Assembly (NCBI GenBank): GCA_964057225.1
Contig: OZ059895.1
Location: 10,106,001 to 10,170,000 of the forward strand
Source: Auanema rhodensis
Taxonomy: Eukaryota; Animalia; Nematoda
Reading direction: 5' to 3'
DNA: 64,000 bases
Made by a program: the position numbers and the translations under genes
Notes under the pieces: model-generated
What the model saw: the letters and a program-made list of their open reading frames with translations, nothing else
What the model was told of the DNA's origin: nothing
Databases searched by the model: none
Shown here: in pieces, positions 1 through 25,860 of the stretch
Position numbering within the stretch: the stretch's first letter is position 1
Layout: every line of letters starts with the position of its first letter

Positions 1-1669
1 GTAACAAATGTTTTCAATTTTCAAGCATTTTTACTTAGATAGCTCAACCAAAGGAGAGCAAATTATCTTCATTCTTATTTCTATATTACAGTTATAAACC
101 AGTAGTTATTGAACCTTCATCTTAACTTTACTGTTTCTATCTATTTCCTATCGAAACAAACATTGTTTAAACACTATGCAACTTTGAAACCCTTTTTAAT
201 TTATTGTTTTTGGAGCTCATAAGATTTGATATCATCGAGGGATCCTGATGGAACGTGGAAAATTACATAACTAACATCAAATTGGAAAAAAAACTGAAAC
301 GAGGATAAGTATGTTAACCATTGAATATCAGATATTTTCGCTTACGACCATACCACGTTAAAAGTACGCCATACAGCTGATTTTTAATTTTATCTCTTCC
401 GTAACAAATGTTTTCAATTTTCAAGCATTTTAACTTAGATAGCTCAACCAAACGAGAGCAAATTATCTTCAATCTTATTTCTATATTGCAGTTATGAACC
501 AGTAGGTAATGAACCTTCGTCTTGACTTCACTGTTTTTATCTTTTTCCTATCGAAACTAACATTGTTTAAACACTATGCAACTGTGAAACCTTTTTTAAT
601 TTATTGTATTTGGAGCTCATAAGATTTGATATCATCGAGGGATCCTGATGGAACGTGGAAAATTACATAACTAACATAAAATTTGAAAAAAAACTATAAC
701 GAGGATAAGTAGGTAAACCATTGAATATCAGATATTTTCGCTTACGACCATACCACGTTGAAAGTACGCCATCCCGTCCGATCTGGCAAGTCAAGCAACG
801 TTGGGCCCGGTTAGTACTTGGATCGGAGACGGCTTGGGAATCCCGGGTGCCGTAAGCTTTTCAAATTTTTTTAACGATCATAACACGTTGAAAGTACGCC
901 ATACAGCTGATTTTCAATTTTATCTCTTCTGTAACAAATTTTTTCAATTTTTAAGCAGTTTTACTTGGATAGCTCAACCGAAGCAGAGCAAAATATCTAC
1001 AATCTTATTTCTATATTACAGTTATAAACCAGTAGTTATTGAACCTTCATCTTAACTTTACTGTTTCTATCTATTTCCTATCGAAACAAACATTGTTTAA
1101 ACACTATGCAACTTTGAAACCCTTTTTAATTTATTGTTTTTGGAGCTCATAAGATTTGATATCATCGAGGGATCCTGATGGAACGTGGAAAATTACATAA
1201 CTAACATCAAATTGGAAAAAAAACTGAAACGAGGATAAGTATGTTAACCATTGAATATCAGATATTTTCGCTTACGACCATACCACGTTAAAAGTACGCC
1301 ATACAGCTGATTTTTAATGTTATCTCTTCCGTAACAAATGTTTTCAATTTTCAAGCATTTTAACTTAGATAGCTCAACCAAACGAGAGCAAATTATCTTC
1401 AATCTTATTTCTATATTGCAGTTATGAACCAGTAGGTAATGAACCTTCGTCTTGACTTCACTGTTTTTATCTTTTTCCTATCGAAACTAACATTGTTTAA
1501 ACACTATGCAACTGTGAAACCTTTTTTAATTTATTGTATTTGGAGCTCATAAGATTTGATATCATCGAGGGATCCTGATGGAACGTGGAAAATTACATAA
1601 CTAACATAAAATTTGAAAAAAAACTATAACGAGGATAAGTAGGTAAACCATTGAATATCAGATATTTTC
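1..1669 (+). repeat. 5S rDNA / 5S-derived satellite array, left part (400-bp and 530-bp units)
   Basis: The 5S 5'-end GCTTACGACCATACCACG recurs at 340, 740, 1270 and 1670 (spacings 400, 530, 400), and the spacers are near-identical. Confidence 0.95.
740..858 (+). rRNA. 5S rRNA gene, full length
   Basis: 119 nt, GCTTACGACCATACC...GGTGCCGTAAGCT, closely resembling C. elegans 5S. The ends pair (GCTTACG/CGTAAGC) and T-runs follow as a Pol III terminator. Confidence 0.97.
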
Positions 1670-1737
1670 GCTTACGACCATACCACGTTGAAAGTACGCC
1701 ATCCCGTCCGATCTGGCAAGTCAAGCAACGTTGGGCC
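1670..1737 (+). pseudogene. 5S rRNA gene, 5' half (nt 1-68), interrupted by the LTR element
   Basis: Identical to 740-807, then switches to LTR sequence TGTCG at 1738. Confidence 0.95.
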
Positions 1738-2067
1738 TGTCGTTTGACAACTGGACTATTACCTCCAAGTATCAGTCCAAGTATGGAGTCGGTTCGTATG
1801 AGTGCGGTATTATGCGTTAAGACAAGTTAAATGAAGAAAGGTTTATTCAACAAAATGCAACAATAGTAAATTGAACAAGTGGATTGATTTAAGAATTTCC
1901 AAGAAATTCCTAAAATCAAAACAAAATTGGTGAGACATAAAAATTTTAACCATTTGGTTCTCCCTTTTATAGGGAGGCACCAGATGGTTAAAGGGGGTGG
2001 AGTTAATACAAAAAATACAACAAAACGTTAACACAATAAAGTTCGTATTTTCACGTTGACCGTGACA
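1738..2067 (-). repeat. 3' LTR (330 bp)
   Basis: No difference from 11616-11945 seen by eye. AATAAA on the minus strand at 1842-1847. Preceded on the minus strand by GCCGGGAA, a short PPT-like tract. Confidence 0.96.
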
Positions 2068-2076
2068 TTCCCGGCA

Positions 2077-2538
2077 TTATGTATGTCTTTTACGTTTGAC
2101 GTCACCACAGACCACCCCATGGTGAGTATCGGCCTTGCACTTATAGCAGGACACTTCGCACATTGCTGAATGTTTTGGGTTCAAACATTTTATGCATAGT
2201 CCCAATTCGTGTAAGCGTATGGTACGCTCTGGGGACGAGGGGTAAATCGGACAAGCAGCTGTACGATGGCCATCAGCTGTAGGCTTGTTGCAGAATATGC
2301 AGGAGGCTTTAGGAGCCGTCTGAACAGCTAAATTATCGAGCTTTAGATTCAGTGTGTTGTTGATGTTATCCAGGCGCGCGGAAATGTGGTTGACAGCGCT
2401 GGCGAGGTTATCATAAAACCTTTTCTCTAGAACCATTAGCTGCCTTAGGTTGGCAGTGGTGTTGGGTAGATGAGAATAATTTTTGAGATCTTCCTCAAAG
2501 GAAGTGTTCTCACTTAAATTGGACGTTATTTCATCCAT
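2077..2538 (-). CDS. Accessory protein, 153 aa: coiled-coil + three Cys/His knuckles + basic tail (CERV/Rev-like candidate)
   Basis: ATG lies 5 nt after the acceptor TTTTTCTCAATTCAG (AG at 2545-2544). Motifs CIFC-x7-H-x4-C, CIKC-x4-H-x3-C, CYKC-x4-HH-x3-C and a KRKRH tail. The stop lies 9 nt from the 3' LTR. Function is inferred. Confidence 0.8.
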   Translation of the reverse strand: MDEITSNLSENTSFEEDLKNYSHLPNTTANLRQLMVLEKRFYDNLASAVNHISARLDNINNTLNLKLDNLAVQTAPKASCIFCNKPTADGHRTAACPIYPSSPERTIRLHELGLCIKCLNPKHSAMCEVSCYKCKADTHHGVVCGDVKRKRHT

Positions 2539-2658
2539 TAGCACTGAATTGAGAAAAACAATGGTTTCCCTCTTTATATATTTGTTCGCATCTGTGGGTT
2601 GACCTATGATAAACGTCCCTTAGTTTATTGTAGAATAGTATGTGTTTACGGATACAAT

Positions 2659-2668
2659 GTATAAAAAG
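2659..2668 (+). promoter_or_regulatory. Candidate TATA box for the antisense gene
   Basis: GTATAAAAAG, ~320 bp upstream of the first ATG, followed by a very T-rich outron-like tract. Confidence 0.4.
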
Positions 2669-2984
2669 CCTGTACAAAGGATTACTTTTTATGTATATTA
2701 TTCGGATAAATAAACTTGATGTTATCAAAGATTGAAGATCTTGATAAAAAGATTTGTTTGTTTATAACTGTTGCATTTGTTTCTATATGTAGTGATTTTC
2801 TTTTGTTTATATTATTTTATGACCTATTTTTGCTTTGTTTATATTTTTTACTATTGTACTACGTGTGATTAGTAATTTAATTTTTATTGTATTCGTGAAG
2901 TTTTTGTACTTCCCTCTTGACTTTATTTTTATTTTTTATTTTTTATTTTTTTTTTTTTTATTTTTATAGTTGTAATTGTTGCAG

Positions 2985-3412
2985 ATGTCACAATTACAGT
3001 ATCAGGTTGAAGAGGAGATTGGAGAAGACGAGCTCGGTCCATATGAACTATGCGAACGATGCAAGGCGCAAGATACTCATCGCATACGGGAGGGCCCGGT
3101 AAGCTTATTATTTTTTTTTTTAATTTAATTTAATTTATTTATTTATTTGTTTATTTTATTTTATCTCAGTATTGTTGCAGATGACAGACGATGAGCTTTA
3201 TCCGGAGGATGGAGTCGAGCCAACTCGGGAGCAGCTCATCTACATGTTCTCGAGGATGCCGTTGCCTCCCAACTGCAGATTCTGCAGGGCAAAGAACCCC
3301 CGCCACCACGAACGTGAGGAGGTAAGCTTATATATTTTAACTGTGAATGTAAGTATTGTTGTAGATGTCAGACGATGATGGTGAGGGGTATCCAGATATT
3401 TCACGTATATAG
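2985..3412 (+). CDS. Antisense three-exon gene inside the LTR element, 100 aa (exons 2985-3098, 3181-3321, 3365-3412)
   Basis: GC-richer exons amid T-rich DNA. Donors G|GTAAGC at 3099 and 3322, acceptors TTGCAG/TTGCAG/TTGTAG, and both introns (82 and 43 nt) are phase 0. The spliced frame is open to TAG at 3410-3412, with AATAAA at 3478. Confidence 0.8.
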
Positions 3413-3477
3413 TGTTTTTGTTTTGTTTTTGTTTTTTTTTTTTTTTTTTTGTTTTTAAACTGTTCTTATAGCTAATT

Positions 3478-3483
3478 AATAAA
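3478..3483 (+). terminator. Polyadenylation signal of the antisense gene
   Basis: AATAAA 65 nt after the stop, followed by a long T tract. Confidence 0.55.
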
Positions 3484-3534
3484 GTTTTTTTTTTTTTTTT
3501 TTTTTTTTTTTATTACTACAGTAAGATTAGTGTT

Positions 3535-5055
3535 TTAATTTTTATTTGTGCTAGACTCAGCTCTGTGTCTAGGATTCCTGAGCATTTTTCTCAGTAATGA
3601 TGTAATGATCATTACAATTTTTATCATCTGAACGATTAATTTTTGTATGATTATGATGATTACAATTATTGCTTGTACTCCTATTATATAAGATAATACT
3701 GGTATAAAAACAGTTATCAGGAGGAAGCATAATGATAATGCCCAATTTGTTTTAATTACATCCAAAATGTTTCTCCAGGTGTTAGCATTTGTCACAATGT
3801 TGATGATTGTTTTTTCAACATCTGGGATTTTACTATCCCATTGTAATGTTCCTTGTATGATCACGCGGTGTTTTTCATTAGCACATGTTACGAAGCATTC
3901 TTCATAGATTTCAGAATGTTCTGAGTAATATTCCACAGCAGTAAGTGGCATGTGTGGGGCGCATTCAATCATGTATATGTTCTCACTACATTGCATTGTG
4001 ATCCAAGAATCCTTTTGTGATATACACATAAACTCGGCAACAGCCGTTCTTCTACAGCTGTGACACCCGGAAAGTTTTTTAAATTCCGGTCGACAAGGAA
4101 AGTCGTACAGGAAGGTACGAGACGACACATTCCCTTGTAGTTGAAGAACAACAGTTGATTCATCAGTTTGAGGAATAAGTGTTAATTTGTTTTCTTTCAT
4201 GGTAATTAGGGTGTTCTTGGTGTTCATTGGTAATAAGTTTGCCTGATTGAAAATATTATCAGATGGACAGGTACATGTTAGCTCTTCCCTTTTTGATATT
4301 TTACAGTTACATAACTTCAGTATTTTACAAGAGTTAAATTCATTTGTAGTTTGATCTTTGGTTTTGCATGCTACTTCACTCATAGTATGAGGTTCCATGT
4401 AATAACTGTTTATGGTTGATAATGCATATTTGGTGTTTAAATATCGGGTTGGTGGTACAATATGGGAGATTGAGCTTATATTAAAGTTTGGAAAATTAAC
4501 AGTGTCGTATGGTTTTAAAAGAATATTAATATTGGCTTTGTGTTTAAATAGATCATACTTTACCTCTAATGGTATATTCATTTCCCAAGAATCACATTCT
4601 ACTATTTCATAAACTATTTCATTGATTGGTTTAAATTCAGTTTGATAGAATGAGCAACCGTCTTCTAGAGACCAACATCCGCAGAAAAGAGAGCCACATC
4701 GCCTAGCACAACCAACTTGTGTTGGTCCTTCTTCTTTATCAAATTCTTGTAATTGTCCAATAGGATTTATAGCTTCACAAGTGTGATTACAAGATCCTGT
4801 TCCATAACAGGAATATCGAGTTTTGTATTGAATTGTGCTTTCTCGAGTATAATATAGCGTACTTTTCTGGCAAATGTATTCTGTTGGTTTTTTCGTTATT
4901 TCTATTTTACCGATAGATTTATTTTGGTAAATGAATTCTAAGCAAGCGTCTCTTATGCCTTTATTGAAATTGATTTCATTATCGTATTCTTGATAACAAT
5001 TTGTCCGATTAATGCAAATTATATTTATTGAATGCTTAATATGTGAGTTTGAACA
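3535..5055 (-). other. Env domain: phlebovirus Gc (G2)-like class II fusion glycoprotein
   Basis: Internal signal LSIALMVLLITVES/C, Cys-rich ectodomain with CYGTGSC and a fusion-loop-like CARRCGSLFCGCWSLEDGCSFY, and a C-terminal hydrophobic anchor. This env type is known from nematode BEL/Pao elements such as Cer7 and Atlas. Confidence 0.88.
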
Positions 5056-8000
5056 AGATTCCACTGTTATTAATAATACCATGAGTGCTATCGATAATTG
5101 TAATGAAGTGAATGATGATGTTCTCATGTAATTTGGAATTTTAATAGTTTCTGGAATATCATTTTTCCATTTTGGAGTTACATTGTCAATTTTCGTGGCT
5201 ACTGTGTTTTCCTTTTGTACGGCTACATCGTCTGAACTTGTTAATATTTTTGAATTAGGTTTTCCACTTCTAACTTCGGTTTGTATCGTTTGCCAATTAT
5301 CATTTAAAAATTTATACCAATATTGGTCATTTTTATGAGCTTTCAATACTCTTTTACAAATTGCTAATATAGTAAATAATAGTATAATTGGTATGAAAAA
5401 TGTTATCAAAGTCGTTAATGGATTACATTGTGGGAAATATAATGCTTCCGCTGTAAGCAATTCAGAGGATTGGCATGTAGCCTCAATCGTTGGAATTATT
5501 CCAAGAAGAGCTACTTTTGGAACATTTGTTTTTATTTTATTTTTCTTAAAATAACTTCTTACCGCTGCTTGACTACCCTGTGTTTTTGTTCTGAACCATC
5601 TATTTAGATTTGAAGGTTTGGATTCATTTTCGGTTTGAAGAGTTATCTCATTTGTTTGATCTTCCTCTTGTTCTAAGTTCGTATTATTAGCATCATTTTC
5701 GTCTCCTGCGTCGTTGATGATATTCATGTTGGGTGTATAGATTTCGAGTGGTATTACATTGTTACTTTGTTCACTTTCTTGAGTATTTTCAATAATTTCA
5801 ATATTTTCCACCCGATTTCCTTTTTGTGTTACCGTCCCGGTGATTAAAAATGGATTCACTTGGTATTTTTTATTGTATCTCATTGAGTGAGGTTCTGACG
5901 CAAACGGTGCTGCTTCTGCGTTTCTCACTTCTAGTGGATATATGTGATTTAATGAACGAGTTGTTATTAGACCAGTGCCAGTTATTAGTTTTGCAGATCT
6001 AACTTCCCCATCTGCACTTTTTATTAGTTCTATTATGCGTCCTAATTTCCATTTACCTCTACTTGAATCCTCATTTTGTATTATAATAACTTCGCCTTCT
6101 TGTGGTTTCTTAGCGTTCGTTGCAGGTTGTTTTCTGTTGTGTTTGTAAATATCTCTAAGATACAGTAAATACTCTGAATAGAATTTTTTCCAGAATAATT
6201 GAGTTACATCGTTAGATAACTCTATTGCTTCAATGGCTTGCTCTATAGTTTGTATTGTCCTGCTATTGATAGTTTTATCATAAATTCGGGTATTCGATAC
6301 GTTTGAAGAAAGTGTAAACCTGATGGAACGGTTTAAAAAATCACAAGGTCTGATAGGCAAAATGTTCAGGTTGGATGGGTTCGGATGTGTAAGCGGGCGA
6401 GTATTCAAAATTGTTTCGATTTTTACAATTACTGTATGTATATCATCAATTGACATTAATCTATTTCCAATTGTTTTGTATAGTGCTAACTTTGTTAGTC
6501 CTACTAGTCTTTCCCATGTTCCACCTTTCCATGGAGCCTGTGGTGTGTTGAAGTACCATTTAATATTCTTTTCGGCAAGATAATTGGTTAATGTTTTTTC
6601 ATTTTTAGATTCATGGTTTTCTGTGTAAAATTCTATTACTTTAGCACTTAATAAGAAATTTCCTCCATTATCGCTTCGTATTATTTCTGGAATACCTCTT
6701 CTTCCAATGAACCTTTCGAAAGCGTTTAAGAATGCCTTTGTTGATTGGTCAAAAACTATTTCTAAGTGTATAGCTCTTATAGCTAAACAAGTAAAGAGAC
6801 ATATAAATATCTTTTTACCATCCTTTATGGTTATTGGACCTAATAAGTCACAACCTGTACTCATGAATGGTTTTGTTAGAATTACTCTATCCTTAGGCAA
6901 TGCTGGCATTAAGGACGTTCCAAACGGCAAAGCGTTGTATCTATTGCAGATTGTGCATGTTTTGAGAACTGATCTGACTATGCTTGATGGTTTATTTAAA
7001 AAGTATTTTTGACGCAAGAGTGTTAGAACAAAATCTCTTCCTTGGTGCATGCATTCTCTGTGTAAATGCATAATTATGTGTTCTGTGTACGGAGAATCCC
7101 TTGGAAGATATATGGGATTTTGAGTTTCAAACGGTAATTCCGAGTTGTTCAATCTACTACGAACTCTGATTATTTCTTCATCGAGAAAAAATACAAAACC
7201 TTCATGTTTTTTCGTGAGGAGATCTATTGTTACATGCTGTTGTGCTTTACTTATTAGTAGTTTGGTTATAATCTCAATATCATTAGCTGTAGTTTGCCAG
7301 TTTTCATCTAATTGCATTACTTTATTTAACCTTGTTATAGCTGTGGGATGTACTTTTATGATCCAATGTCTCAAGAATTTACTTACTTTAACTATAGTTT
7401 TCAGTAAGGTATAGTTGTTGCTACGTAATTTGAATATATCTTCAACTGGTATTTGTGTTATTTGTTGTTGTTCAACGGTATCGATCAAGGTTGTTATATT
7501 CCAAATAGGCTCATATTCAATTTCTTCAATGTGTGACTTTGTTTGGGTTAACCATTGTGGTCCTTTAATCCACATAGAATCACTTAGTTCTTGGAGACAA
7601 GCTCCTCGAGAACCAATATCGGCTGGGTTATAATCACCATTCACATGAAAAAGTTTGATTTTAATGTTATTTTCCTTCAATTTATCTATATACTTCCTTA
7701 CATTGTCGACGCGACAGCCTACATATGGTGGTAAAGTTTTCTGATGGTTAGCTATCCAATGTAAGGCTACCTTACTGTCACTGGCTACGTGTACAGTTTT
7801 AAGGTGATTGGTTGTAGATGTGATATTATCAGCTAACATAATACCTAATAGTATGGCAATGAGTTCTAGTCTTGGGATAGTTAGATTTCCCTTTTTTGCA
7901 ATTTTCGACTTTCCGCTTACAAGTTGGCTTATTTTACCATTGGTTTCAATGTATGTGCAGGCAGCAATGGCTAGTTTACTAGCATCAGTAAATACCCATA

Positions 8001-11000
8001 ATATAGAGTCATTCAGGTTTAACTTTCTTTCAAGTCTCAATTCCTTTTCATTTAATAATTCATTTATGACTAAATTCCATTTATGTGTTATTTCTTGGGG
8101 TAATTCAACATCCCAACCCTTGAATTGATCACTTGATTCTCTTAATAATAATTTTAATGGTAAAATCAATGGGCTTGCCATGCCTAATGGATCAAATATT
8201 GAATGTATTTGACTTAACATGTTCCTGTGCGTATTGATTTCAAATTTCTTTAATTTGAGTATAAGAACGAATAAATCTAATTTTGTATCATAATTTAAAC
8301 CCAAAATTTTGGTAGTATTATGTGGGTATTTGTCTTCATTGTTCATATCTTCAGTAACTTTTGGATTGTTGCTCATAAATTCTCTTAAATTCATAGAAAT
8401 GCCTTGTAAGATTTTCTTGGCTTTTTCGCATTTTATCTTAGCTTCTTCAACACTGTTTGCATATAAAATTATATTGTCAACATATAAAGAATCGAGCAAG
8501 TGACTAGCGTAAGGGTCGGTATGATTATTGAGGTACCAAGCTAAGCTCATGCTTAATATACCCGGGGACGCTGTTATACCAAATGGTAGCCGTTTGAATT
8601 GGTATGTCATGACGTTATATTTATTTACCGATTCATTTTCGTTTCTGATCCAGAAAAATTTACAATATTTTCTGTGCTCTTCTTTAATACTTATTTGTAA
8701 AAATGCTGACTCAATGTCGCAGGTTATTATTATTGGACTTTTTCTACATTTTATTAATATATCATGAATTTTGTGAATAAATGTTTGGCCTGAATGCATA
8801 ACTTGGTTCAACGATGGACTATTTTTTTGTTTTGCTGAAGCATCAAACACGATTCTTAAAGGTCGAGCTTTTTCTTTTCTCCACACTCCATGATGTGGTA
8901 AGAAAAATCCATCTTCGGCTGATTCATCAACAATTGGCTCGATAATTCCCTTTTGAATGTATTCATTTATTAATTTTTTATACCATTCTAGTTGTTCTTT
9001 ATTAGAGTGTAGATTTTTCCATAATGTCATGAATCTATGAAAAGCTGGCCATTTATTATTTTTCAATTTATTCAAATAATTTTTAAATGGAAACGGAGCT
9101 TCAATTCTCCCGGCTTTAATGGATAGTTCTTTACTATATTCTTTAAGATAATTCTCTGCTTCTGCATTGTTATCTACTATGGTGCTTATTCCAATAGTAT
9201 CGATAAGGAAAAGTTCTTTCAGTTTTGTTTCTGGAGGTGGTTCATGACTTTGTTCCTCTTCAATGCTACACAGAGTTACAATTTTTTCAAGTTTAGTTTC
9301 TCCATTTATAAGAGTTCCAAATACAGATCCTTTACATAAAAGATCAGAGGGAAGTCTGAATTCTTCATTGTCTTTTACAAACAATTTTAATCTATCTTGT
9401 CCAATTAAAACATCCGGTTCAAAAACTTCCCCATTTGTATCGGTTTTGGCTAATATAATATTGTTTTCTTTAATGAAACTCAAATCCTTTCTTGAAAGAT
9501 AAGGACTATATATGTGGGAACTGATTTTTGGTTTAGTGAGCATTTCAGTTACAATTAAATTTTTCTCTTTAGTATAGAATATTGTGTTAACTATACTTGA
9601 AACATGAGAATGTTTCATTCCTCCAATACCATGAAATGTTTTTTTATGTTTGGATTTAACTGGTAGTTTCATCCTTTTTGCTAGATCTTCTCTGATAAAA
9701 GATCGTTGAGAACAATCATCAAAGATAATGTTAACTTTCTCATAACTATCGCTATTGTAATTGAACAAATTTGCTTTTGCTGTTCGTAAAATTATTTGGC
9801 CTTTTTCTACGTCATGATTACCAACAATTGTGGTTAAACTTGTGGGTTCTTCATGTGCTTTCTTTGGAATAATTGTTTGATTATTTCTGGTCTTTTCTTC
9901 ATCATTATCCCTTTGTAAAGAAATGTTGGTGATGACTCCATTTCTATTCTGATTTCTTTTATTTTGGTAACAAACTGAAATGTTGTGATCATCATGACAG
10001 CTGTTGCATTTAAACTTTGGCCATGTGCAGTTTTTGCTTTGATGATTGTCTGCAAAGCATACATAACATAGCCTTTTTTCTCTTAAAATTTTCCTTTTTT
10101 CCGTTGTTTCAACAGGACACATATGGCTATTGTGTGAATTGTTCGCGCAAAAAACGCAATTCCTTCTTTGTTTCAAATCTTTAACTTCATTCAATCGAAA
10201 TTGTTTTTTAGTTTGATCACCATCTGGATTTTTTCTTTTTTCATTGTTACTGAGATACAGTGTTTCAGTGTTTTCAGTCATCTGTAGTAGTTTTACTTGC
10301 GCCGAAATATGTTCAATGATTTTCTCGTGGGACCATTCAAAATTTTGTTTGATGTGAATATCTTTGATTATTTCAAATGGGAATTTATTGAGTACGGTAG
10401 CAACATAAAGCTCTTTGGTTAATGATCCTCCCGCCGCTTGAATCTGTCGCAGCAGAGCTTTTATCTCTCTTAGCGTTTGAGCACAACTATCGGCTCGTCT
10501 TGAAGCTTTTGGCACCTTATTCAACTTGTTGATCAGCGTTGCTGTATCAACAGCGTATGAGGAATATTCTTCCTTCAAACAATTTTTCATAAACTCATAG
10601 TTTTCTTCGGTACCGGGAATTCCCCTAAGAAGATATTCGGCTTCACCTGATAAGGACTCACATAGGAAGTTCACTTTTTCACTTATAGAGAAAGATTCAT
10701 TGTTATCAATCATTCTCATGAATCTATCCCAGAATAAAGGGAATTTTTCCGGAGTACCGTCAAAGGTTGGAGTTTTTAATACGGGTCTTTGCAGTATTTG
10801 GTTAATCAGTCTTACTTCATTAACATGCTGATCATGCACTACCTGATCGGGTAAACTGTTTTGTTTTTCTTGTACCTCGTTTGTACAATTTTCATATTCT
10901 TTTTCTTCTGTATATTCAACTCTTTCCCGAAGTTGTTGTAATTCAAGTTGTATTTCCATATCTTTGATTTTTTCTTTATTTTTATCAATGAGGTTTTTTA

Positions 11001-11367
11001 AGAATATCAACTTGTCATTTAATTCCAGAATTATTAACGTGGCATTGCCACGGATGTCTCCTTTTTCACCTTCTTCGATTTTTGTAAATTTTTTGTTTAA
11101 TTCTTTTTGGAGCTCTTCTTCTAAAAGCTCACAAACTCTTTGAAAATTTATTTCAATGGTTTCAATTGATTGGAGTTTATTCTCCAAAATATTCAAGTAA
11201 TTTTTAACTCTTGCACATTCATTCTCTTGCGCAATAATTTGATTTACCGGCTCAGACAATTCTGAGTAATCGGTCATTTTCTTATAGTTTTCAACTTTAG
11301 AATTCAGTTTATTCAAAAATTCTAATTCTCTCCCCATTTGGAGAATATATCTTTGAGCGGAGGACAT
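3535..11367 (-). CDS. Gag-Pol-Env polyprotein (2610 aa from first ATG)
   Basis: Uninterrupted ORF. Gag motif PTFDG..F..FW..F, knuckles CVFC/CYVC/CNSC, protease-position FDDCSQRSFI, RT LRIVFDAS..DIESAFLQI..RLPFG..YVDN (8473-8484), RNase H VFTDAS..TIPRLEL, integrase H..H..CTIC + SDNG + GGTWERLV, then glycoprotein. Confidence 0.96.
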   Translation of the reverse strand: MSSAQRYILQMGRELEFLNKLNSKVENYKKMTDYSELSEPVNQIIAQENECARVKNYLNILENKLQSIETIEINFQRVCELLEEELQKELNKKFTKIEEGEKGDIRGNATLIILELNDKLIFLKNLIDKNKEKIKDMEIQLELQQLRERVEYTEEKEYENCTNEVQEKQNSLPDQVVHDQHVNEVRLINQILQRPVLKTPTFDGTPEKFPLFWDRFMRMIDNNESFSISEKVNFLCESLSGEAEYLLRGIPGTEENYEFMKNCLKEEYSSYAVDTATLINKLNKVPKASRRADSCAQTLREIKALLRQIQAAGGSLTKELYVATVLNKFPFEIIKDIHIKQNFEWSHEKIIEHISAQVKLLQMTENTETLYLSNNEKRKNPDGDQTKKQFRLNEVKDLKQRRNCVFCANNSHNSHMCPVETTEKRKILREKRLCYVCFADNHQSKNCTWPKFKCNSCHDDHNISVCYQNKRNQNRNGVITNISLQRDNDEEKTRNNQTIIPKKAHEEPTSLTTIVGNHDVEKGQIILRTAKANLFNYNSDSYEKVNIIFDDCSQRSFIREDLAKRMKLPVKSKHKKTFHGIGGMKHSHVSSIVNTIFYTKEKNLIVTEMLTKPKISSHIYSPYLSRKDLSFIKENNIILAKTDTNGEVFEPDVLIGQDRLKLFVKDNEEFRLPSDLLCKGSVFGTLINGETKLEKIVTLCSIEEEQSHEPPPETKLKELFLIDTIGISTIVDNNAEAENYLKEYSKELSIKAGRIEAPFPFKNYLNKLKNNKWPAFHRFMTLWKNLHSNKEQLEWYKKLINEYIQKGIIEPIVDESAEDGFFLPHHGVWRKEKARPLRIVFDASAKQKNSPSLNQVMHSGQTFIHKIHDILIKCRKSPIIITCDIESAFLQISIKEEHRKYCKFFWIRNENESVNKYNVMTYQFKRLPFGITASPGILSMSLAWYLNNHTDPYASHLLDSLYVDNIILYANSVEEAKIKCEKAKKILQGISMNLREFMSNNPKVTEDMNNEDKYPHNTTKILGLNYDTKLDLFVLILKLKKFEINTHRNMLSQIHSIFDPLGMASPLILPLKLLLRESSDQFKGWDVELPQEITHKWNLVINELLNEKELRLERKLNLNDSILWVFTDASKLAIAACTYIETNGKISQLVSGKSKIAKKGNLTIPRLELIAILLGIMLADNITSTTNHLKTVHVASDSKVALHWIANHQKTLPPYVGCRVDNVRKYIDKLKENNIKIKLFHVNGDYNPADIGSRGACLQELSDSMWIKGPQWLTQTKSHIEEIEYEPIWNITTLIDTVEQQQITQIPVEDIFKLRSNNYTLLKTIVKVSKFLRHWIIKVHPTAITRLNKVMQLDENWQTTANDIEIITKLLISKAQQHVTIDLLTKKHEGFVFFLDEEIIRVRSRLNNSELPFETQNPIYLPRDSPYTEHIIMHLHRECMHQGRDFVLTLLRQKYFLNKPSSIVRSVLKTCTICNRYNALPFGTSLMPALPKDRVILTKPFMSTGCDLLGPITIKDGKKIFICLFTCLAIRAIHLEIVFDQSTKAFLNAFERFIGRRGIPEIIRSDNGGNFLLSAKVIEFYTENHESKNEKTLTNYLAEKNIKWYFNTPQAPWKGGTWERLVGLTKLALYKTIGNRLMSIDDIHTVIVKIETILNTRPLTHPNPSNLNILPIRPCDFLNRSIRFTLSSNVSNTRIYDKTINSRTIQTIEQAIEAIELSNDVTQLFWKKFYSEYLLYLRDIYKHNRKQPATNAKKPQEGEVIIIQNEDSSRGKWKLGRIIELIKSADGEVRSAKLITGTGLITTRSLNHIYPLEVRNAEAAPFASEPHSMRYNKKYQVNPFLITGTVTQKGNRVENIEIIENTQESEQSNNVIPLEIYTPNMNIINDAGDENDANNTNLEQEEDQTNEITLQTENESKPSNLNRWFRTKTQGSQAAVRSYFKKNKIKTNVPKVALLGIIPTIEATCQSSELLTAEALYFPQCNPLTTLITFFIPIILLFTILAICKRVLKAHKNDQYWYKFLNDNWQTIQTEVRSGKPNSKILTSSDDVAVQKENTVATKIDNVTPKWKNDIPETIKIPNYMRTSSFTSLQLSIALMVLLITVESCSNSHIKHSINIICINRTNCYQEYDNEINFNKGIRDACLEFIYQNKSIGKIEITKKPTEYICQKSTLYYTRESTIQYKTRYSCYGTGSCNHTCEAINPIGQLQEFDKEEGPTQVGCARRCGSLFCGCWSLEDGCSFYQTEFKPINEIVYEIVECDSWEMNIPLEVKYDLFKHKANINILLKPYDTVNFPNFNISSISHIVPPTRYLNTKYALSTINSYYMEPHTMSEVACKTKDQTTNEFNSCKILKLCNCKISKREELTCTCPSDNIFNQANLLPMNTKNTLITMKENKLTLIPQTDESTVVLQLQGNVSSRTFLYDFPCRPEFKKLSGCHSCRRTAVAEFMCISQKDSWITMQCSENIYMIECAPHMPLTAVEYYSEHSEIYEECFVTCANEKHRVIIQGTLQWDSKIPDVEKTIINIVTNANTWRNILDVIKTNWALSLCFLLITVFIPVLSYIIGVQAIIVIIIIIQKLIVQMIKIVMIITSLLRKMLRNPRHRAESSTNKN

Positions 11368-11595
11368 TATTTTAGCCTTCCTCAATGGATATTTCAGATT
11401 CAGCGATATTTTTATCGTCTTATTGTTTCTTGACAAGTGATTTCTTGTCAACTCGGATTTTCTACGAGTTCTTCGGAATTTTATTTCTCCGGCGGTTCTA
11501 TATAACCTTTAACACAATGTTCTTCGGAATTTATTTTTCCGGCGGTTCTATATAACCTTTGTTTTAAACTTTCCTTATCAGTAAGCAACTGAAAT

Positions 11596-11613
11596 ATCCT
11601 GCCGTGGTCGCCA
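11596..11613 (-). promoter_or_regulatory. Primer binding site, tRNA-Arg
   Basis: Minus strand TGGCGACCACGGCAGGAT starts 2 nt after the 5' LTR and is complementary to the tRNA-Arg 3' end ...ATCCTGCCGTGGTCGCCA (recalled sequence). Confidence 0.85.
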
Positions 11614-11615
11614 AA

Positions 11616-11945
11616 TGTCGTTTGACAACTGGACTATTACCTCCAAGTATCAGTCCAAGTATGGAGTCGGTTCGTATGAGTGCGGTATTATGCGTTAAGA
11701 CAAGTTAAATGAAGAAAGGTTTATTCAACAAAATGCAACAATAGTAAATTGAACAAGTGGATTGATTTAAGAATTTCCAAGAAATTCCTAAAATCAAAAC
11801 AAAATTGGTGAGACATAAAAATTTTAACCATTTGGTTCTCCCTTTTATAGGGAGGCACCAGATGGTTAAAGGGGGTGGAGTTAATACAAAAAATACAACA
11901 AAACGTTAACACAATAAAGTTCGTATTTTCACGTTGACCGTGACA
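11616..11945 (-). repeat. 5' LTR (330 bp)
   Basis: TGTCA...CGACA on the minus strand, TATA-like CTATAAAAG at 11842-11850, and AATAAA at 11720-11725. Confidence 0.96.
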
Positions 11946-12001
11946 GGGCCCGGTTAGTACTTGGATCGGAGACGGCTTGGGAATCCCGGGTGCCGTAAGC
12001 T
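11946..12001 (+). pseudogene. 5S rRNA gene, 3' half (nt 64-119)
   Basis: GGGCCCGGTTAGTAC...GTAAGCT resumes right after the LTR, with GGGCC duplicated. Confidence 0.95.
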
Positions 12002-13210
12002 TTTCAAATTTTTTTAACGATCATAACACGTTGAAAGTACGCCATACAGCTGATTTTCAATTTTATCTCTTCTGTAACAAATTTTTTCAATTTTTAAGCA
12101 GTTTTACTTGGATAGCTCAACCGAAGCAGAGCAAAATATCTACAATCTTATTTCTATATTACAGTTATAAACCAGTAGTTATTGAACCTTCATCTTAACT
12201 TTACTGTTTCTATCTATTTCCTATCGAAACAAACATTGTTTAAACACTATGCAACTGTGAAACCTCTTCAATTTATTGCATTTGGAGCTCATAAGATTTG
12301 ATATCATCGAGGGATCCTGATGGAACGTGGAAAATTACATAACTAACATGAAATTGGAAAAAAAACTAAAACGAGGATAAGTATGTTAACCATTGAATAT
12401 CAGATATTTTCGCTTACGACCATACTACGTTAAACGTACGCCATACAGCTGATTTTTAATTTTATCTCTTCCGTAACAAATGTTTTCAATTTTCAAGCCT
12501 TTTTACTTAGATAGCTCAACCAAAGGAGAGCAAATTATCTTCATTCTTATTTCTATATTACAGTTATAAACCAGTAGTTATTGAACCTTCATCTTAACTT
12601 TACTGTTTCTATCTATTTCCTATCGGAACAAACATTGTTTAAACACTATGCAACTTTGAAACCCTTTTTAATTTATTGTTTTTGGAGCTCATAAGATTTG
12701 ATATCATCGAGGGATCCTGATGGAACGTGGAAAATTACATAACTAACATTAAGTTGGAAAAAAAACTGAAACGAGGATAAGTATGTTAACCATTGAATAT
12801 CAGATATTTTCGCTTACGACCATACCACGTTAAAAGTACGCCATACAGCTGATTTTTAATTTTATCTCTTCCGTAACAAATGTTTTCAATTTTCAAGCAT
12901 TTTAACTTAGATAGCTCAACCAAACGAGAGCAAATTATCTTCAATCTTATTTCTATATTGCAGTTATGAACCAGTAGGTAATGAACCTTCGTCTTGACTT
13001 CACTGTTTTTATCTTTTTCCTATCGAAACTAACATTGTTTAAACACTATGCAACTGTGAAACCTTTTTTAATTTATTGTATTTGGAGCTCATAAGATTTG
13101 ATATCATCGAGGGATCCTGATGGAACGTGGAAAATTACATAACTAACATGAGATTGCAAAAAAACTAAAACGAGGATAAGTATGTTAACTATTGAATATC
13201 AGATATTTTC

Positions 13211-13329
13211 GCTTATGACCATACCACGTTGAAAGTACGCCATCCCGTCCGATCTGGCAAGTCAAGCAACGTTGGGCCCGGTTAGTACTTGGATCGGAGA
13301 CGGCTTGGGAATCCCGGGTGCCGTAAGCT
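13211..13329 (+). rRNA. 5S rRNA gene (C6T variant)
   Basis: Same as 740-858 except GCTTAT. Confidence 0.92.
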
Positions 13330-14935
13330 TTTCAAATTTTTTTAACGATCATAACACGTTGAAAGTACGCCATACAGCTGATTTTCAATTTTATCTCTTC
13401 TGTAACAAATTTTTTCAATTTTTAAGCAGTTTTACTTGGATAGCTCAACCGAAGCAGAGCAAAATATCTACAATCTTATTTCTATATTACAGTTATAAAC
13501 CAGTAGTTATTGAACCTTCATCTTAACTTTACTGTTTCTATCTATTTCCTATCGAAACAAACATTGTTTAAACACTATGCAACTGTGAAACCTCTTCAAT
13601 TTATTGCATTTGGAGCTCATAAGATTTGATATCATCGAGGGATCCTGATGGAACGTGGAAAATTACATAACTAACATGAAATTGGAAAAAAAACTAAAAC
13701 GAGGATAAGTATGTTAACCATTGAATATCAGATATTTTCGCTTACGACCATACTACGTTAAACGTACGCCATACAGCTGATTTTTAATTTTATCTCTTCC
13801 GTAACAAATGTTTTCAATTTTCAAGCATTTTTACTTAGATAGCTCAACCAAACGAGAGCAAATTATCTTCAATCTTATTTCTATATTGCAGTTATGAACC
13901 AGTAGGTAATGAACCTTCGTCTTGACTTCACTGTTTTTATCTTTTTCCTATCGAAACTAACATTGTTTAAACACTATGCAACTGTGAAACCTTTTTTAAT
14001 TTATTGTATTTGGAGCTCATAAGATTTGATATCATCGAGGGATCCTGATGGAACGTGGAAAATTACATAACTAACATGAGATTGCAAAAAAACTAAAACG
14101 AGGATAAGTATGTTAACTATTGAATGTCAGATATTTTCGCTTACGACCATACCACGTTAAAAGTACGCCACACAGCTGATTTTTAATTTTATCTCCGTAA
14201 CAAATGTTTTCAATTTTCAAGCATTTTAACTTAGATAGCTCAACCAAAGGAAAGCAAATTATCTTCAATCTTATTTCTATATTACAGTTATAAACCAGTA
14301 GTTATTGAACCTTCGTCTAGACTTTAGTGTTTTTATCTATTTCCTATCAAAACAAACATTGTTTAAACACTATACAACTATGAAAACTTTTTTAATTTAT
14401 TGTATTTGGAGCTCATAAGATTTGATATCATCGAGGGATCCTGATGGAACGTGGAAAATTACATAACTAACATAAAATTTGAAAAAAAACTAAAACGAGG
14501 ATAAATAGGTAAACCATTGAATATCAGATATTTTCGCTTACGACCATACCACGTTGAAAGTACGCCATACAGCTGATTTTTAATTTTATCTCTTCCGTAA
14601 CAAATGTTTTCAATTTTCAAGCATTTTTACTTAGATAGCTCAACCAAAGGAGAGCAAATTATCTTCAATCTTATTTCTATATTACAGTTATAAACCAGTA
14701 GTTATTAAACCTTCATCTTAACTTTACTGTTTCTATCTATTTCCTATCGAAACAAACATTGTTTAAACACTATGCAACTTTGAAACCCTTTTTAATTTAT
14801 TGTTTTTGGAGCTCATAAGATTTGATATCATCGAGGGATCCTGTCGGAACGTGGAAAATTACATAACTAACATTAAATTGGAAAAAAAACTAAAACGAGG
14901 ATAAGTATGTTAACCATTGACAATCAGATATTTTC

Positions 14936-15054
14936 GCTTACGACCATACCACGTTGAAAGTAAGCCATCCCGTCCGATCTAGCAAGTCAAGCAACGTTGG
15001 GCCCGGTTAGTACTTGGATCGGAGACGGCTTGGGAATCCCGGGTGCCGTAAGCT
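14936..15054 (+). rRNA. 5S rRNA gene (two substitutions)
   Basis: Same as 740-858 except GTAAGCC and ATCTAGC. Confidence 0.88.
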
Positions 15055-16264
15055 TTTCAAATTTTTTTAACGATCATAACACGTTGAAAGTACGCCATAC
15101 AGCTGATTTTCAATTTTATCTCTTCTGTAACAAATTTTTTCAACTTTTAAGCAGTTTTACTTGGATAGCTCAACCGAAGCAGAGCAAAATATCTACAATC
15201 TAATTTCTATATTACAGTTATAAACCAGTAGTTATTGAACCTTCTTCTTAACTTTACTGTTTCTATCTATTTCCTATCGAAACAAACATTGTTTAAACAC
15301 TATGCAACTGTGAAACCTCTTCAATTTATTGCATTTGGAGCTCATAAGATTTGATATCATCGAGGGATCCTGATGGAACGTGGAAAATTACATAACTAAC
15401 ATGAAATTGGAAAAAAAACTAAAACGAGGATAAGTATGTTAACCATTGAATATCAGATATTTTCGCTTACGACCATACTACGTTAAACGTACGCCATACA
15501 GCTGATTTTTAATTTTATCTCTTCCGTAACAAATGTTTTCAATTTTCAAGCATTTTTACTTAGATAGCTCAACCAAAGGAGAGCAAATTATCTTCATTCT
15601 TATTTCTATATTACAGTTATAAACCAGTAGTTAATGAACCTTCATCTTAACTTTACTGTTTCTATCTATTTCCTATCGAAACAAACATTGTTTAAACACT
15701 ATGCAACTTTGAAACCCTTTTTAATTTATTGTTTTTGGAGCTCATAAGATTTGATATCATCGAGGGATCCTGATGGAACGTGGAAAATTACATAACTAAC
15801 ATCAAATTGGAAAAAAAACTGAAACGAGGATAAGTATGTTAACCATTGAATATCAGATATTTTCGCTTACGACCATACCACGTTAAAAGTACGCCATACA
15901 GCTGATTTTTAATTTTATCTCTTCCGTAACAAATGTTTTCAATTTTCAAGCATTTTAACTTAGATAGCTCAACCAAACGAGAGCAAATTATCTTCAATCT
16001 TATTTCTATATTGCAGTTATGAACCAGTAGGTAATGAACCTTCGTCTTGACTTCACTGTTTTTATCTTTTTCCTATCGAAACTAACATTGTTTAAACACT
16101 ATGCAACTGTGAAACCTTTTTTAATTTATTGTATTTGGAGCTCATAAGATTTGATATCATCGAGGGATCCTGATGGAACGTGGAAAATTACATAACTAAC
16201 ATAAAATTTGAAAAAAAACTATAACGAGGATAAGTAGGTAAACCATTGAATATCAGATATTTTC

Positions 16265-16383
16265 GCTTACGACCATACCACGTTGAAAGTACGCCATCCC
16301 GTCCGATCTGGCAAGTCAAGCAACGTTGGGCCCGGTTAGTACTTGGATCGGAGACGGCTTGGGAATCCCGGGTGCCGTAAGCT
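16265..16383 (+). rRNA. 5S rRNA gene, full length
   Basis: Identical to 740-858. Confidence 0.96.
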
Positions 16384-20570: not shown

Positions 20571-20574
20571 AATA

Positions 20575-20878
20575 GTGAAAAATTTTTAACTAGAAAATAT
20601 CTTTCTTGCCCTGCAACAAGTTCGGAAGTTGAGAGAGTTTTTAGCGGTAGCGGCTTAATTTTAAATGACTTGAAATCGTCTATGTCCGACTCAACGCTTT
20701 CAATGTTAACATTTTTGAAATGTAACATTCCTTTGTTTGATTACAAATAAAATGTTCTGAGAAATCGCCTTGACAACGTATGTCTCTAAAAGAGGTCCGG
20801 GTCCGGTCCGGGATCCGCTCGGGTATTGCCTCAAAAAATGCGGCCCGGTCCGAAAAATTCTCGGTCCGAGCAGCCCTG
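20575..20878 (+). mobile_element. hAT DNA transposon 3' end (dimerisation domain + terminus)
   Basis: RKYLSCPATSSEVERVFSGSG...LTFLKCN is the hAT C-terminal motif. Subterminal GGTCCG repeats are present and the segment ends GCAGCCCTG (CAGGG-type TIR). Confidence 0.85.
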
Positions 20879-21121
20879 ATGCGTATCAATTGTATTTTTC
20901 CAGAAGTAATAAGGATGTGAACTATTGATACCAAGTGTGTCATATCTATCAATTTCCTTCAAAAATTGTAGTATTATTAAAAAAAGAGGAATCATTAATT
21001 TCTAACCGATTCTTCTATGTTTTGCGATATTGTGCTACTGGTCCATTCTTCAGAAATATTGTAGCTTGATTTTGTTGTATTTATGTTAACTGGTATTGGC
21101 CCTAGTTCATTTTGAATTTGT

Positions 21122-21495: not shown

Positions 21496-21720
21496 CCTAA
21501 CATCTTGCCTTTACTGTTTCTATCTATGTCCAATCAAAATAAACATTGTTTAACCACTATACAACTGTGAAACCTTTCTTATTTTATTGAATTTGGATCT
21601 CATAAGATTTGATATCATTGATGGATACCGATGAAACGTTGAAAATTACATAACTAACATGGAATTGGAAAAAACTTTAATGAGGTCAAGTATGTAAACT
21701 ATTAAAAATCATTTATTTCC

Positions 21721-25856: not shown

Positions 25857-25860
25857 AATA

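What the first reader, a model, noticed from the sequence alone, without database searches (positions are those of the whole stretch)
2077..2560. Second accessory gene: CERV/Rev-like zinc-knuckle protein abutting the 3' LTR of a BEL/Pao element
Seen: a sense ORF separate from the polyprotein, preceded by a 3' splice site (TTTTTCTCAATTCAG|TGCTAATG), with a heptad-rich segment (LASAVNHISARLDNINNTLNLKLDNL), three Cys/His knuckles spaced like BEL Gag's, an NLS-like KRKRH, and a stop 9 nt from the LTR. Established (from memory): the C. elegans gypsy element Cer1 makes CERV from a spliced mRNA, a coiled-coil/Cys-His protein needed to export unspliced genomic RNA. Inference: this BEL/Pao element has an analogous or homologous Rev-like factor, possibly derived from a duplicated nucleocapsid domain.
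Basis: partly seen in the sequence, partly recalled or inferred. Interest (0 to 1): 0.82.

Follow-up and report, generated by a model that had tools for sequence, protein, structure and literature searches.

The report
Small nucleocapsid-like gene after env
A nematode endogenous retrovirus-like element (BEL/Pao, Atlas-like) carries, between env and its 3' LTR, a real small gene copied long ago from its own nucleocapsid; related worms have the same gene, the papers searched do not describe it, and it is not related to CERV.

Summary
On the minus strand, ORF 2544..2077 (153 codons from the ATG at 2538) lies between env and the 3' LTR. It sits in an intact 10.2-kb BEL/Pao element (1738-11945) with identical LTRs, inserted in a 5S rRNA gene.

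- **Shape:** acidic N-terminus, one long amphipathic helix, three CCHC knuckles, and a basic tail at the C-terminus.
- **Origin:** the knuckles align with the element's own Gag nucleocapsid (29% identity, E 6e-6). No capsid remnant lies nearby, so it is not a decayed gag.
- **Family:** an exhaustive search found about 40-50 stand-alone proteins of the same layout in rhabditid nematodes (Auanema, Diploscapter, Heterorhabditis, strongylids). All are unnamed and none is in Pfam. The Auanema protein aligns from Met1 (E 2e-32).
- **Position:** one Ostertagia gene model joins a Phlebovirus-G2 env tail to this domain, so the position after env recurs.
- **CERV:** homology is not supported. CERV has 517 aa, five exons, H/M/G domains and no CCHC knuckles.
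- **Function:** a Rev-like role is only an inference. Use of the splice acceptor could not be tested.

The parts
1738..11945 (-). Whole LTR element (10,208 bp), BEL/Pao (Belpaoviridae), Atlas/Cer13-like. It is inserted in a 5S rRNA gene with a 5-bp target duplication GGGCC (1733-1737 and 11946-11950). No broken genes were seen: 0 stops and 0 frameshifts in the polyprotein ORF.
   Evidence: LTRs 330 bp, 100% identical; 5S gene cut at the insertion; Pfam
1738..2067 (-). 3' LTR (TG..CA). On the sense strand it starts 9 nt after the stop of the small ORF.
11616..11945 (-). 5' LTR. It has a TATA-like box near 11853-11845 and an AATAAA at 11726-11721. A primer-binding site starting TGG lies at 11613-11598.
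3535..11451 (-). Single Gag-Pol-Env reading frame, 2638 codons as listed; the first ATG is at 11367. Pfam stretches: DUF1759 capsid 10363-10764, RT 8398-8790, Peptidase_A17 7774-8232, integrase zinc domain 6931-7086, DUF5641 5935-6219, Phlebovirus_G2 4150-5055. The YVDN motif of nematode belpaoviruses is present.
   Evidence: the hallmark list is from PMC9094657
9955..10167 (-). Gag nucleocapsid with three CCHC knuckles. This is the paralogue of the small ORF's C-terminal half.
   Evidence: 29% identity over 76 aa, E 6e-6; Gag-type profile 42.5 bits against small-type profile 24.9 bits
2545..3534 (-). Spacer between env and the small ORF: very AT-rich with GC-rich islands. AATAAA (3514-3509) and a run of 27 A (3511-3485) directly follow the env stop. 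There is no gag-like remnant in any frame.
2572..2580 (-). TATA-like box about 35 nt upstream of the ATG. Its surroundings resemble the TATA region of the LTR. This is a candidate internal promoter and only a lead.
2544..2558 (-). Pyrimidine run followed by TTCAG: a 3' splice-site-like string (AG at 2545-2544, putative exon start 2543). Whether it is used is untested.
2077..2538 (-). The small ORF from ATG to stop: 153 aa plus TAA. GC3 is 0.48, against 0.27 for the polyprotein.
2461..2538 (-). Residues 1-26: N-terminal segment with two short helices. Residues 1-76 together have pI 4.9. It aligns with the N-terminus of the Auanema homologue starting from Met1.
2317..2460 (-). Residues 27-74: one long amphipathic helix, a candidate coiled coil for oligomerisation.
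2107..2301 (-). Residues 80-144: three CCHC zinc knuckles (2251-2301, 2158-2196, 2107-2148) with a short helix between knuckles 1 and 2 (2206-2235). pLDDT is above 90.
   Evidence: (invariant C83 H91 C96 C115 C118 C131 C134 H139)
2080..2097 (-). Residues 148-153: C-terminal basic tail, an NLS-like K[KR]x[KR] motif.
   Evidence: the motif is in the tail of 18 of 29 intact family members, and in 0 of 21 Gag-type nucleocapsids at the same place

Best explanation
**What it is.** The ORF is a genuine, element-encoded accessory gene of a lineage of nematode belpaoviruses (Atlas/Cer13-like: Gag-Pol-Env in one frame, phlebovirus-type env). It arose by duplication of the three-knuckle nucleocapsid (NC) part of Gag. 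It then gained its own acidic N-terminus, a long amphipathic helix and a C-terminal K[KR]x[KR] tail.

**Shown here.**
- It lies inside an LTR-bounded, intact element.
- Its knuckles are homologous to Gag NC.
- A family of stand-alone proteins with the same layout exists across rhabditid nematodes.
- In one Ostertagia gene model the same domain follows a G2 env.

**Inferred mechanism.**
- The helix makes the protein oligomeric.
- The knuckles bind single-stranded nucleic acid with a specificity close to that of Gag NC, so probably the element's own unspliced RNA.
- The basic tail takes the protein into the nucleus.
- There it marks the full-length RNA for export and hands it to Gag for translation or packaging. 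This would be a Rev/CERV-like job reached by a different protein: analogy, not homology.

**Inferred expression.** A subgenomic mRNA, made either by cis- or spliced-leader trans-splicing at 2544/2543, or from the TATA-like box at 2580-2572.

**How sure.** About 0.9 that it is a real, conserved, NC-derived accessory gene. About 0.35 that its role is the nuclear RNA-export or hand-over role described; the confidence figure given is for that whole mechanism.
For: - **Element anatomy:**
- **NC homology:** (E 6e-6, all knuckles aligned; Gag proteins of other belpaoviruses hit only 2107-2322, occasionally extending further).
- **Family:** (82 hits, most 105-185 aa).
  - Sequences read.
  - Names: Auanema, Ostertagia, Haemonchus, Ancylostoma, Nippostrongylus, Heligmosomoides, Heterorhabditis, Diploscapter, Cylicocyclus.
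- **Full-length homology:** the Auanema protein aligns from Met1 (E 2e-32).
- **Profile test without the window's sequence:** the small-type profile scores the ORF's domain 74.6 bits against 53.8 for the Gag-type profile. The element's own Gag NC scores the reverse, 24.9 against 42.5.
- **Position after env:** P0004 has Phlebovirus_G2 (E 6e-29) followed by this domain in one gene model.
- **Structure:** mean pLDDT 86.7, helix 27-74, well-ordered knuckles.
- **Basic tail:** specific to the small family, 18 of 29 against 0 of 21.
- **Charge split:** acidic N-part and basic C-part are conserved, with median pI 4.9 and 9.0.
- **Why an export factor is plausible:** a single Gag-Pol-Env frame implies subgenomic RNAs. 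In the nematode element Cer1, unspliced RNA needs an element-encoded factor for export (PMC10309623).
Against: - No RNA or protein data of any kind. Acceptor use, promoter use and localisation are all untested.
- The acceptor string is low in information.
- An export-signal-like hydrophobic pattern before knuckle 1 is only weakly enriched: 16 of 39 members against 9.3 expected from shuffles.
- A basic tail can simply add RNA affinity rather than act as an import signal.
- Atlas virus itself has only about 175 non-coding nt by the paper's numbers. It has no room for this ORF, so the gene is not essential to every member of the clade.
- Conservation of position rests on one fused gene model, because I did not fetch DNA of sister elements.
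- GC3 of 0.48 against 0.27 shows a different history or constraint from the rest of the element, and I cannot explain it.
Confidence: 0.35

Rival explanations
1. Cytoplasmic assembly cofactor: a second, free nucleocapsid-like chaperone. It would coat or anneal the genomic RNA (primer placement, dimerisation, packaging) or link capsid to Env, with no nuclear role.
For: The knuckle domain scores highly against Gag-type NC profiles (53.8 bits), so NC-like chaperone activity is the most conservative inference. The layout of helix plus CCHC knuckles resembles the ORF1 proteins of some non-LTR elements (from memory, not tested here). The ORF co-occurs with env in P0004.
Against: Gag already supplies NC in large amounts. 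The K[KR]x[KR] tail is specific to the small family and absent after Gag knuckle 3 (18 of 29 against 0 of 21), which points to a property Gag NC lacks.
Confidence: 0.2
2. Self-limiting factor: a truncated-Gag-like decoy that competes with Gag for genomic RNA and holds copy number down. This would work like Ty1 p22, a short Gag form made from an internal start (from memory).
For: It is a Gag-derived fragment with a possible internal promoter (TATA-like box). It is not universal in the clade, since Atlas has no room for it, as expected for a modulator.
Against: The family has its own N-terminal helix and tail, conserved across genera. It is not just a shortened Gag: no capsid part is present, whereas p22 acts through capsid contacts.
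Confidence: 0.13
3. Nuclear regulator or counter-defence protein. It would either activate LTR transcription, or blunt the host's nuclear small-RNA silencing. The second would resemble the small cysteine-rich, nucleic-acid-binding proteins encoded at the 3' end of some plant RNA viruses (from memory).
For: It is small, sits at the 3' end of the genome, is cysteine-rich, and has an NLS-like tail and an oligomerising helix. Nematodes restrain these elements chiefly by RNA silencing (title and abstract of PMC7084138).
Against: No similarity to any known suppressor or activator. Foldseek found nothing at E<0.5 in the viral library or at E<4 in PDB.
Confidence: 0.15
4. Not a gene: a decayed, nested gag fragment, or a chance ORF kept open only because the insertion is young.
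For: The LTRs are identical, so an intact frame in this copy alone proves nothing. The NJ tree of the 70-aa domain does not separate small-type from Gag-type cleanly.
Against: There is no capsid remnant, nested LTR or other gag trace in 2545-3534. Stand-alone homologues of the same length and layout occur in at least nine nematode genera. The Auanema protein aligns from Met1 to the last knuckle. The family has features Gag lacks.
Confidence: 0.03
5. A host gene (or a domesticated NC-like gene) captured by this element, rather than an element gene found in hosts.
For: GC3 is 0.48 against 0.27 for the polyprotein, outside the range of any 77-codon window of the polyprotein (maximum 0.416). The neighbouring antisense exon-like blocks are also GC-rich. 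Many homologues are annotated as ordinary host genes.
Against: Homologues are multi-copy within species and often have degenerate tails, as transposon-borne ORFs do. One is fused to a G2 env. The knuckles are typical belpaovirus NC.
Confidence: 0.07

Closest known systems
Gag nucleocapsid of belpaoviruses (for example Atlas virus NC, with three CCHC knuckles)
   Same: Three CCHC knuckles of the same spacing with a linker helix. Detectable homology to the element's own NC and to other NCs. Three knuckles are described as a belpaovirus hallmark (bioRxiv 10.64898/2026.03.22.711591).
   Different: It is a stand-alone 153-aa protein encoded after env. It is not preceded by a capsid domain or followed by protease. 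It has its own acidic N-terminus, long helix and terminal K[KR]x[KR] tail.
CERV of the C. elegans gypsy-type element Cer1
   Same: An extra protein of a nematode LTR element, encoded (in part) between the polyprotein and the 3' LTR. Both have a helical multimerising part, cysteines thought to hold zinc, and a short basic NLS-like motif (PMC10309623). This makes it a possible functional analogue.
   Different: CERV has 517 aa, comes from five exons of which three share the gag frame, and has H, M and G domains with a possible C4-type Cys loop and no CCHC knuckles. It belongs to a different element family (Ty3/gypsy). No CERV-like protein came back from the exhaustive search. I did not fetch CERV itself, because of the bar on animal-virus comparators.
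Rev / Rex / Rem / Rec of complex retroviruses (from memory)
   Same: Small, 3'-encoded proteins made from subgenomic mRNA. They are basic, oligomeric and enter the nucleus.
   Different: They bind RNA through an arginine-rich helix and carry a defined export signal. Here the RNA-binding part would be zinc knuckles, and the export-signal test was inconclusive. There is no sequence or fold match.
Ty1 p22 restriction factor and ORF1 proteins of non-LTR elements that combine a coiled coil with CCHC knuckles (from memory)
   Same: p22 is a Gag-derived short protein from an internal start. The ORF1 proteins combine a coiled coil with CCHC knuckles and act as nucleic-acid chaperones.
   Different: p22 is the capsid half of Gag, not the NC half. 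ORF1 proteins belong to a different class of element. The non-LTR ORFs in this same window show no similarity to the small ORF.

Membership tests
CERV (Cer1) | Detectable sequence relationship to CERV | tested here: not met
   The exhaustive phmmer search gave 82 hits. All near-full-length domain matches run through the three-knuckle module that CERV lacks, and none of the 20 hits whose names I looked up is a Caenorhabditis protein or CERV. CERV itself was not fetched.
CERV (Cer1) | About 517 aa with H (helix hairpin with leucine zipper shared with GAG), M (ring-forming, Cys loop) and G domains | tested here: not met
   The ORF has 153 aa: two short helices, one long helix and three knuckles. 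The CERV description is from PMC10309623.
CERV (Cer1) | Made from a multi-exon mRNA whose first exons share the gag frame | tested here: inconclusive
   The Auanema homologue aligns from its Met1 to this ORF's Met1, which suggests a self-contained ORF. Only the ORF's own frame stays open across the acceptor (read). No RNA data were available.
CERV (Cer1) | Needed for nuclear export of unspliced element RNA | not testable with these tools
   No expression or localisation data are available here.
Belpaovirus Gag nucleocapsid | Three CCHC knuckles homologous to NC | tested here: met
Belpaovirus Gag nucleocapsid | Part of the Gag polyprotein, after the capsid (DUF1759) and before protease | tested here: not met
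   It is a separate ORF after env, with no capsid-like sequence upstream in any frame.
Rev-type export factors | Arginine-rich RNA-binding helix | tested here: not met
   None is present. The basic residues sit in the knuckle domain and a 5-residue tail.
Rev-type export factors | Leucine-rich nuclear export signal | tested here: inconclusive
   The pattern is present (residues 56-65 and an overlapping one), but across the family only 16 of 39 members have it against 9.3 expected from shuffles.
Rev-type export factors | Nuclear import signal and oligomerisation | tested here: inconclusive
   A K[KR]x[KR] tail is conserved and there is a long amphipathic helix. Both are sequence-level indications only.
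Small post-env NC-like proteins of rhabditid nematodes (family defined in this report) | Stand-alone protein of about 105-185 aa with an acidic N-part, a helix, three knuckles, and an end within 20 aa of knuckle 3 that usually carries K[KR]x[KR] | tested here: met
   (74.6 bits against a profile built without the window's sequence).
Atlas/Cer13-like belpaovirus (the host element) | Gag-Pol-Env in one frame, phlebovirus G2-type env, three-knuckle NC, YVDN in RT | tested here: met
   The criteria are from PMC9094657 and the 2026 preprint. The closest indexed polyproteins are only 25-28% identical, so this is a distant member.

The most novel reading that the evidence does not exclude
Belpaoviruses with an env have evolved their own export or hand-over factor for unspliced RNA by duplicating the Gag nucleocapsid and sending the copy to the nucleus. 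That would be a third, independent invention of a Rev-like function (after complex retroviruses and Cer1/CERV), possibly expressed through nematode spliced-leader trans-splicing.
Probability: 0.2. Interest if true: 0.8.

Novelty: new variant of a known kind. Interest (0 to 1): 0.6.

Why it matters
Accessory genes are the mark of 'complex' retroviruses. Outside vertebrates only a few have been characterised; CERV in Cer1 is the main nematode example.

This report shows a compact, NC-derived accessory gene family in the third great lineage of LTR elements (BEL/Pao, Belpaoviridae). It is spread over free-living and parasitic rhabditid nematodes, including hookworms and Haemonchus. It is absent from Pfam. 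Neither of the two Atlas-virus papers in the held library mentions a post-env ORF or an accessory gene.

It gives a concrete candidate for how elements with a single Gag-Pol-Env frame sort their RNAs. It is also a clean case of a new gene born from a structural domain of the same element.

Tried and rejected
**Searches that found nothing useful**
- Pfam found no family for the ORF or for 25 family members.
- The word-index protein search with the single sequence found nothing. With the alignment it found only 4 proteins, because of word-index limits.
- The profile search of PDB sequences gave only influenza HA2 matches at E 0.003-1. They lie over the long helix and a few cysteines, and I take them for coiled-coil bias.
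- Foldseek found nothing significant in PDB (best E 4.2, with Lin28 knuckles among the weak hits) or in BFVD (best E 0.59).
- A tblastn control against the phage collection was empty.
- No close relative of the polyprotein is indexed (25-28% identity at best), so the host species stays unknown.
- Literature searches found no description of a post-env ORF in belpaoviruses. That covers the held library only.

**Ideas tested and dropped**
- A nested or decayed gag: no capsid trace.
- An RNA structure as the cause of the GC-rich 3' half: z-score -1.12.
- Kinship with the non-LTR ORFs of the same window: none.
- An NJ tree of the 70-aa domain did not separate small-type from Gag-type cleanly. Whether there was one duplication or several is open.

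Full report
**1. Where it sits**

The finding lies on the minus strand of an LTR element spanning 1738-11945 (10,208 bp).
- The LTRs (1738-2067 and 11616-11945) are 330 bp, TG..CA, and 100% identical.
- The element interrupts a 5S rRNA gene inside a 5S array, with a 5-bp duplication GGGCC on both sides.
- One uninterrupted frame (11451..3535, first ATG at 11367) carries several domains in turn:
  - a DUF1759 capsid;
  - three Gag knuckles;
  - an aspartic protease-like stretch (weak Asp_protease_2 match);
  - RT (with YVDN);
  - Peptidase_A17;
  - the integrase zinc domain;
  - DUF5641;
  - a Phlebovirus_G2 env (E 1.2e-48).
- That is the organisation published for Atlas virus and its nematode relatives (PMC9094657; bioRxiv 10.64898/2026.03.22.711591).
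- I counted no breaks in the element's genes.
- Only one copy is in the window.
- The nearest indexed polyproteins are 25-28% identical, so the host species remains unknown.

**2. The observation**

The ORF runs 2544..2077, 155 codons from a GTG, with the ATG as codon 3 (2538), giving 153 aa.
- The stop is 9 nt from the LTR.
- The quoted acceptor-like string is present, with AG at 2545-2544. TTCAG occurs 12 times on the element's sense strand, and only two of those sites have a pyrimidine run close upstream. The site is therefore suggestive but weak, and its use cannot be tested here.
- A TATA-like box at 2580-2572, in a context resembling the LTR's own TATA region, offers an alternative route of expression. 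This too is only a lead.

**3. What the protein looks like**

AlphaFold2, run with a 25-sequence alignment, gives mean pLDDT 86.7. It shows two short N-terminal helices, one helix over residues 27-74, then a well-ordered three-knuckle domain with a linker helix at 102-111.
- One heptad register puts L/I/V/M/F at 64% of a/d positions, against 33% overall.
- The N-part is acidic (pI 4.9) and the C-part basic (pI 9.1).
- The last six residues carry a K[KR]x[KR] motif.

**4. Origin from the nucleocapsid**

- The C-terminal half aligns with the element's own Gag knuckles: 29% identity over 76 aa, E 6e-6, with every Cys and His in register.
- Gag proteins of other belpaoviruses hit only this part of the 3' region by tblastn. 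Nothing capsid-like lies in 2545-3534. I therefore reject a decayed nested gag.

**5. Relatives**

Pfam has nothing and the word search was blank. It returned 82 proteins at E<=1e-3, seven of them at E<=1e-10.
- Most are 105-185 aa and share the whole layout.
- Source names are all 'hypothetical' or spurious. They come from these species:
  - Auanema sp. JU1783 (best hit, E 1.4e-22);
  - Ostertagia ostertagi;
  - Haemonchus contortus and H. placei;
  - Ancylostoma duodenale and A. ceylanicum;
  - Nippostrongylus brasiliensis;
  - Heligmosomoides polygyrus;
  - Cylicocyclus nassatus;
  - Heterorhabditis bacteriophora;
  - Diploscapter pachys.
- The Auanema protein aligns from Met1 to the last knuckle (35% identity, E 2e-32). 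This supports the ATG at 2538 as the start and shows that the N-terminal part is conserved too.
- In alignment A2 the invariant columns are M1, C83, H91, C96, C115, C118, C131, C134 and H139.

**6. A family distinct from Gag NC**

- A domain profile separates the hits into two groups: small proteins at 63-104 bits, and Gag or polyprotein NCs at 11-52 bits, with three short proteins also in the lower range.
- With the window's sequences left out, the small-type profile scores the ORF's domain 74.6 bits and the Gag-type profile 53.8 bits. The element's own NC behaves the other way, 24.9 against 42.5.
- The K[KR]x[KR] tail is found in 18 of 29 intact small proteins and after knuckle 3 of 0 of 21 Gag-type proteins.
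- The NJ tree of the 70-aa domain is not clean. The window's ORF groups with the Auanema protein and a Logan protein, and sits closer to Gag NCs than the strongylid proteins do. I therefore cannot say whether the duplication happened once.

**7. Position in other elements**

I have one piece of protein-level evidence. P0004 (Ostertagia, 389 aa) is a gene model with a Phlebovirus_G2 domain (E 6e-29; aligned with this element's env at E 2e-12). A membrane segment follows, and then the small protein's knuckle half. That half nearly repeats the stand-alone P0002 of the same species.

Atlas virus itself has no room for such an ORF by the paper's numbers: 9204 - 2x271 - 8487 = 175 nt. The gene therefore marks a subset of the clade.

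**8. CERV**

According to PMC10309623, CERV has these features:
- 517 aa, from a five-exon mRNA whose first exons share the gag frame;
- H, M and G domains;
- a leucine zipper shared with GAG;
- a possible C4-type Cys loop;
- a KRKK motif;
- no recognised RNA-binding motif.

None of that architecture is here, and no CERV-like protein came back from the searches. The likeness is one of position and possibly of role, not of descent. I did not fetch CERV: it is a protein of an animal virus-like element, and the bar forbids it.

**9. Mechanism**

The committed reading is an oligomeric, nucleus-entering, NC-like RNA binder that marks the element's unspliced RNA for export or hand-over to Gag.
- I put about 0.35 on this role and about 0.9 on the gene being real and NC-derived.
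- The steps from 'binds RNA' onward are inference.
- Rivals are a cytoplasmic chaperone, a self-limiting decoy, and a regulator or counter-defence protein.

**10. Unexplained**

- GC3 of the ORF is 0.48, against 0.27 for the polyprotein and a maximum of 0.416 in any 77-codon window of it.
- No significant RNA structure explains this (z -1.12).

**11. Steps left out and disclosures**

- **(a) Sister-element DNA not fetched.**
  - As a result there is no DNA-level synteny survey and no dN/dS.
  - I also made no check of the roughly 1-kb contigs for leader or SL junctions.
- **(b) Cluster look-ups.**
  - The listing of cluster members is itself an exact look-up. I used it twice, only to obtain names for proteins the protein search had already returned.
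  - It also returned five further member proteins (P0083, P0084, P0086-P0088). These were in the protein set scanned in my local domain analysis.
  - If that counts as a look-up fetch, it is a slip, and I report it here.
- **(c) Plus-strand model.** The three-exon model in the spacer was searched exon by exon only. The joined product was not built or searched.
- **(d) No consensus.**
  - The profile HMMs made in scratch were used for scores only, and no consensus line was used.
- **(e) Report hand-in.** This is the same report with that field filled in.

Noticed in passing
window 2985-3098, 3181-3321, 3365-3412 (+ strand), AATAAA at 3478-3483: Antisense to the element, inside the spacer between env and the small ORF, lie three GC-rich blocks. 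Each starts with ATG right after a TTGTTG(C/T)AG acceptor-like string. The first two end before GTAAGCTTA, all are in phase 0, and the third ends in a stop followed by a poly(A) signal. This looks like a small three-exon gene of about 100 codons, built from a triplicated unit. The first two blocks each contain a CxxC...H motif. Pfam finds nothing exon by exon. The joined model was not searched, as the rule requires.
   Followed up: partly
window 3485-3514 (- strand): Directly after the env stop the sense strand has AATAAA and a run of 27 A encoded in the DNA. It might be an internal polyadenylation site. It might also be the scar of a polyadenylated template onto which the 3' module (small ORF and antisense blocks) was joined. 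Together with the GC3 jump (0.27 to 0.48) it hints that the 3' module has a separate history.
   Followed up: no
window 1-1737 and 11946-27125: The element sits in a 5S rDNA array built of 400- and 530-bp units, of which only some carry a full 5S gene (Rfam finds 6 complete copies plus the interrupted one). The insertion splits a 5S gene. Whether this lineage targets 5S genes is unknown.
   Followed up: no
window 11480-11510 and 11530-11560: A direct repeat of 31 nt (97% identical) with 50-nt spacing lies in the 5' leader between the primer-binding site and the gag ATG. It is a candidate packaging or dimerisation signal.
   Followed up: no
window 32668-35533 (-), 38283-42336 (both strands), 23398-24258 and 28684-29544 (+): There are non-LTR retrotransposon ORFs: an RT-bearing ORF at 32668-34383 (-) and ORFs with an endonuclease-type domain at 34214-35533 (-) and 39352-40371 (+). 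Two 366-aa ORFs lie in inverted orientation, and a 286-aa ORF is repeated 5,286 bp apart. None resembles the small ORF.
   Followed up: partly
proteins P0006 (439 aa) and P0037 (264 aa), Logan assemblies: P0006 carries three tandem copies of the three-knuckle module, and the shorter P0037 carries two. They are a multi-module variant of the family, from an unnamed source.
   Followed up: no
protein P0062 (268 aa, JGI metagenome, named 'putative hemolysin' by its source): The knuckle module is followed by a hydrophobic, signal-peptide-like stretch. This may be a different gene order, with the knuckle protein before an env-like protein. The source name looks spurious.
   Followed up: no
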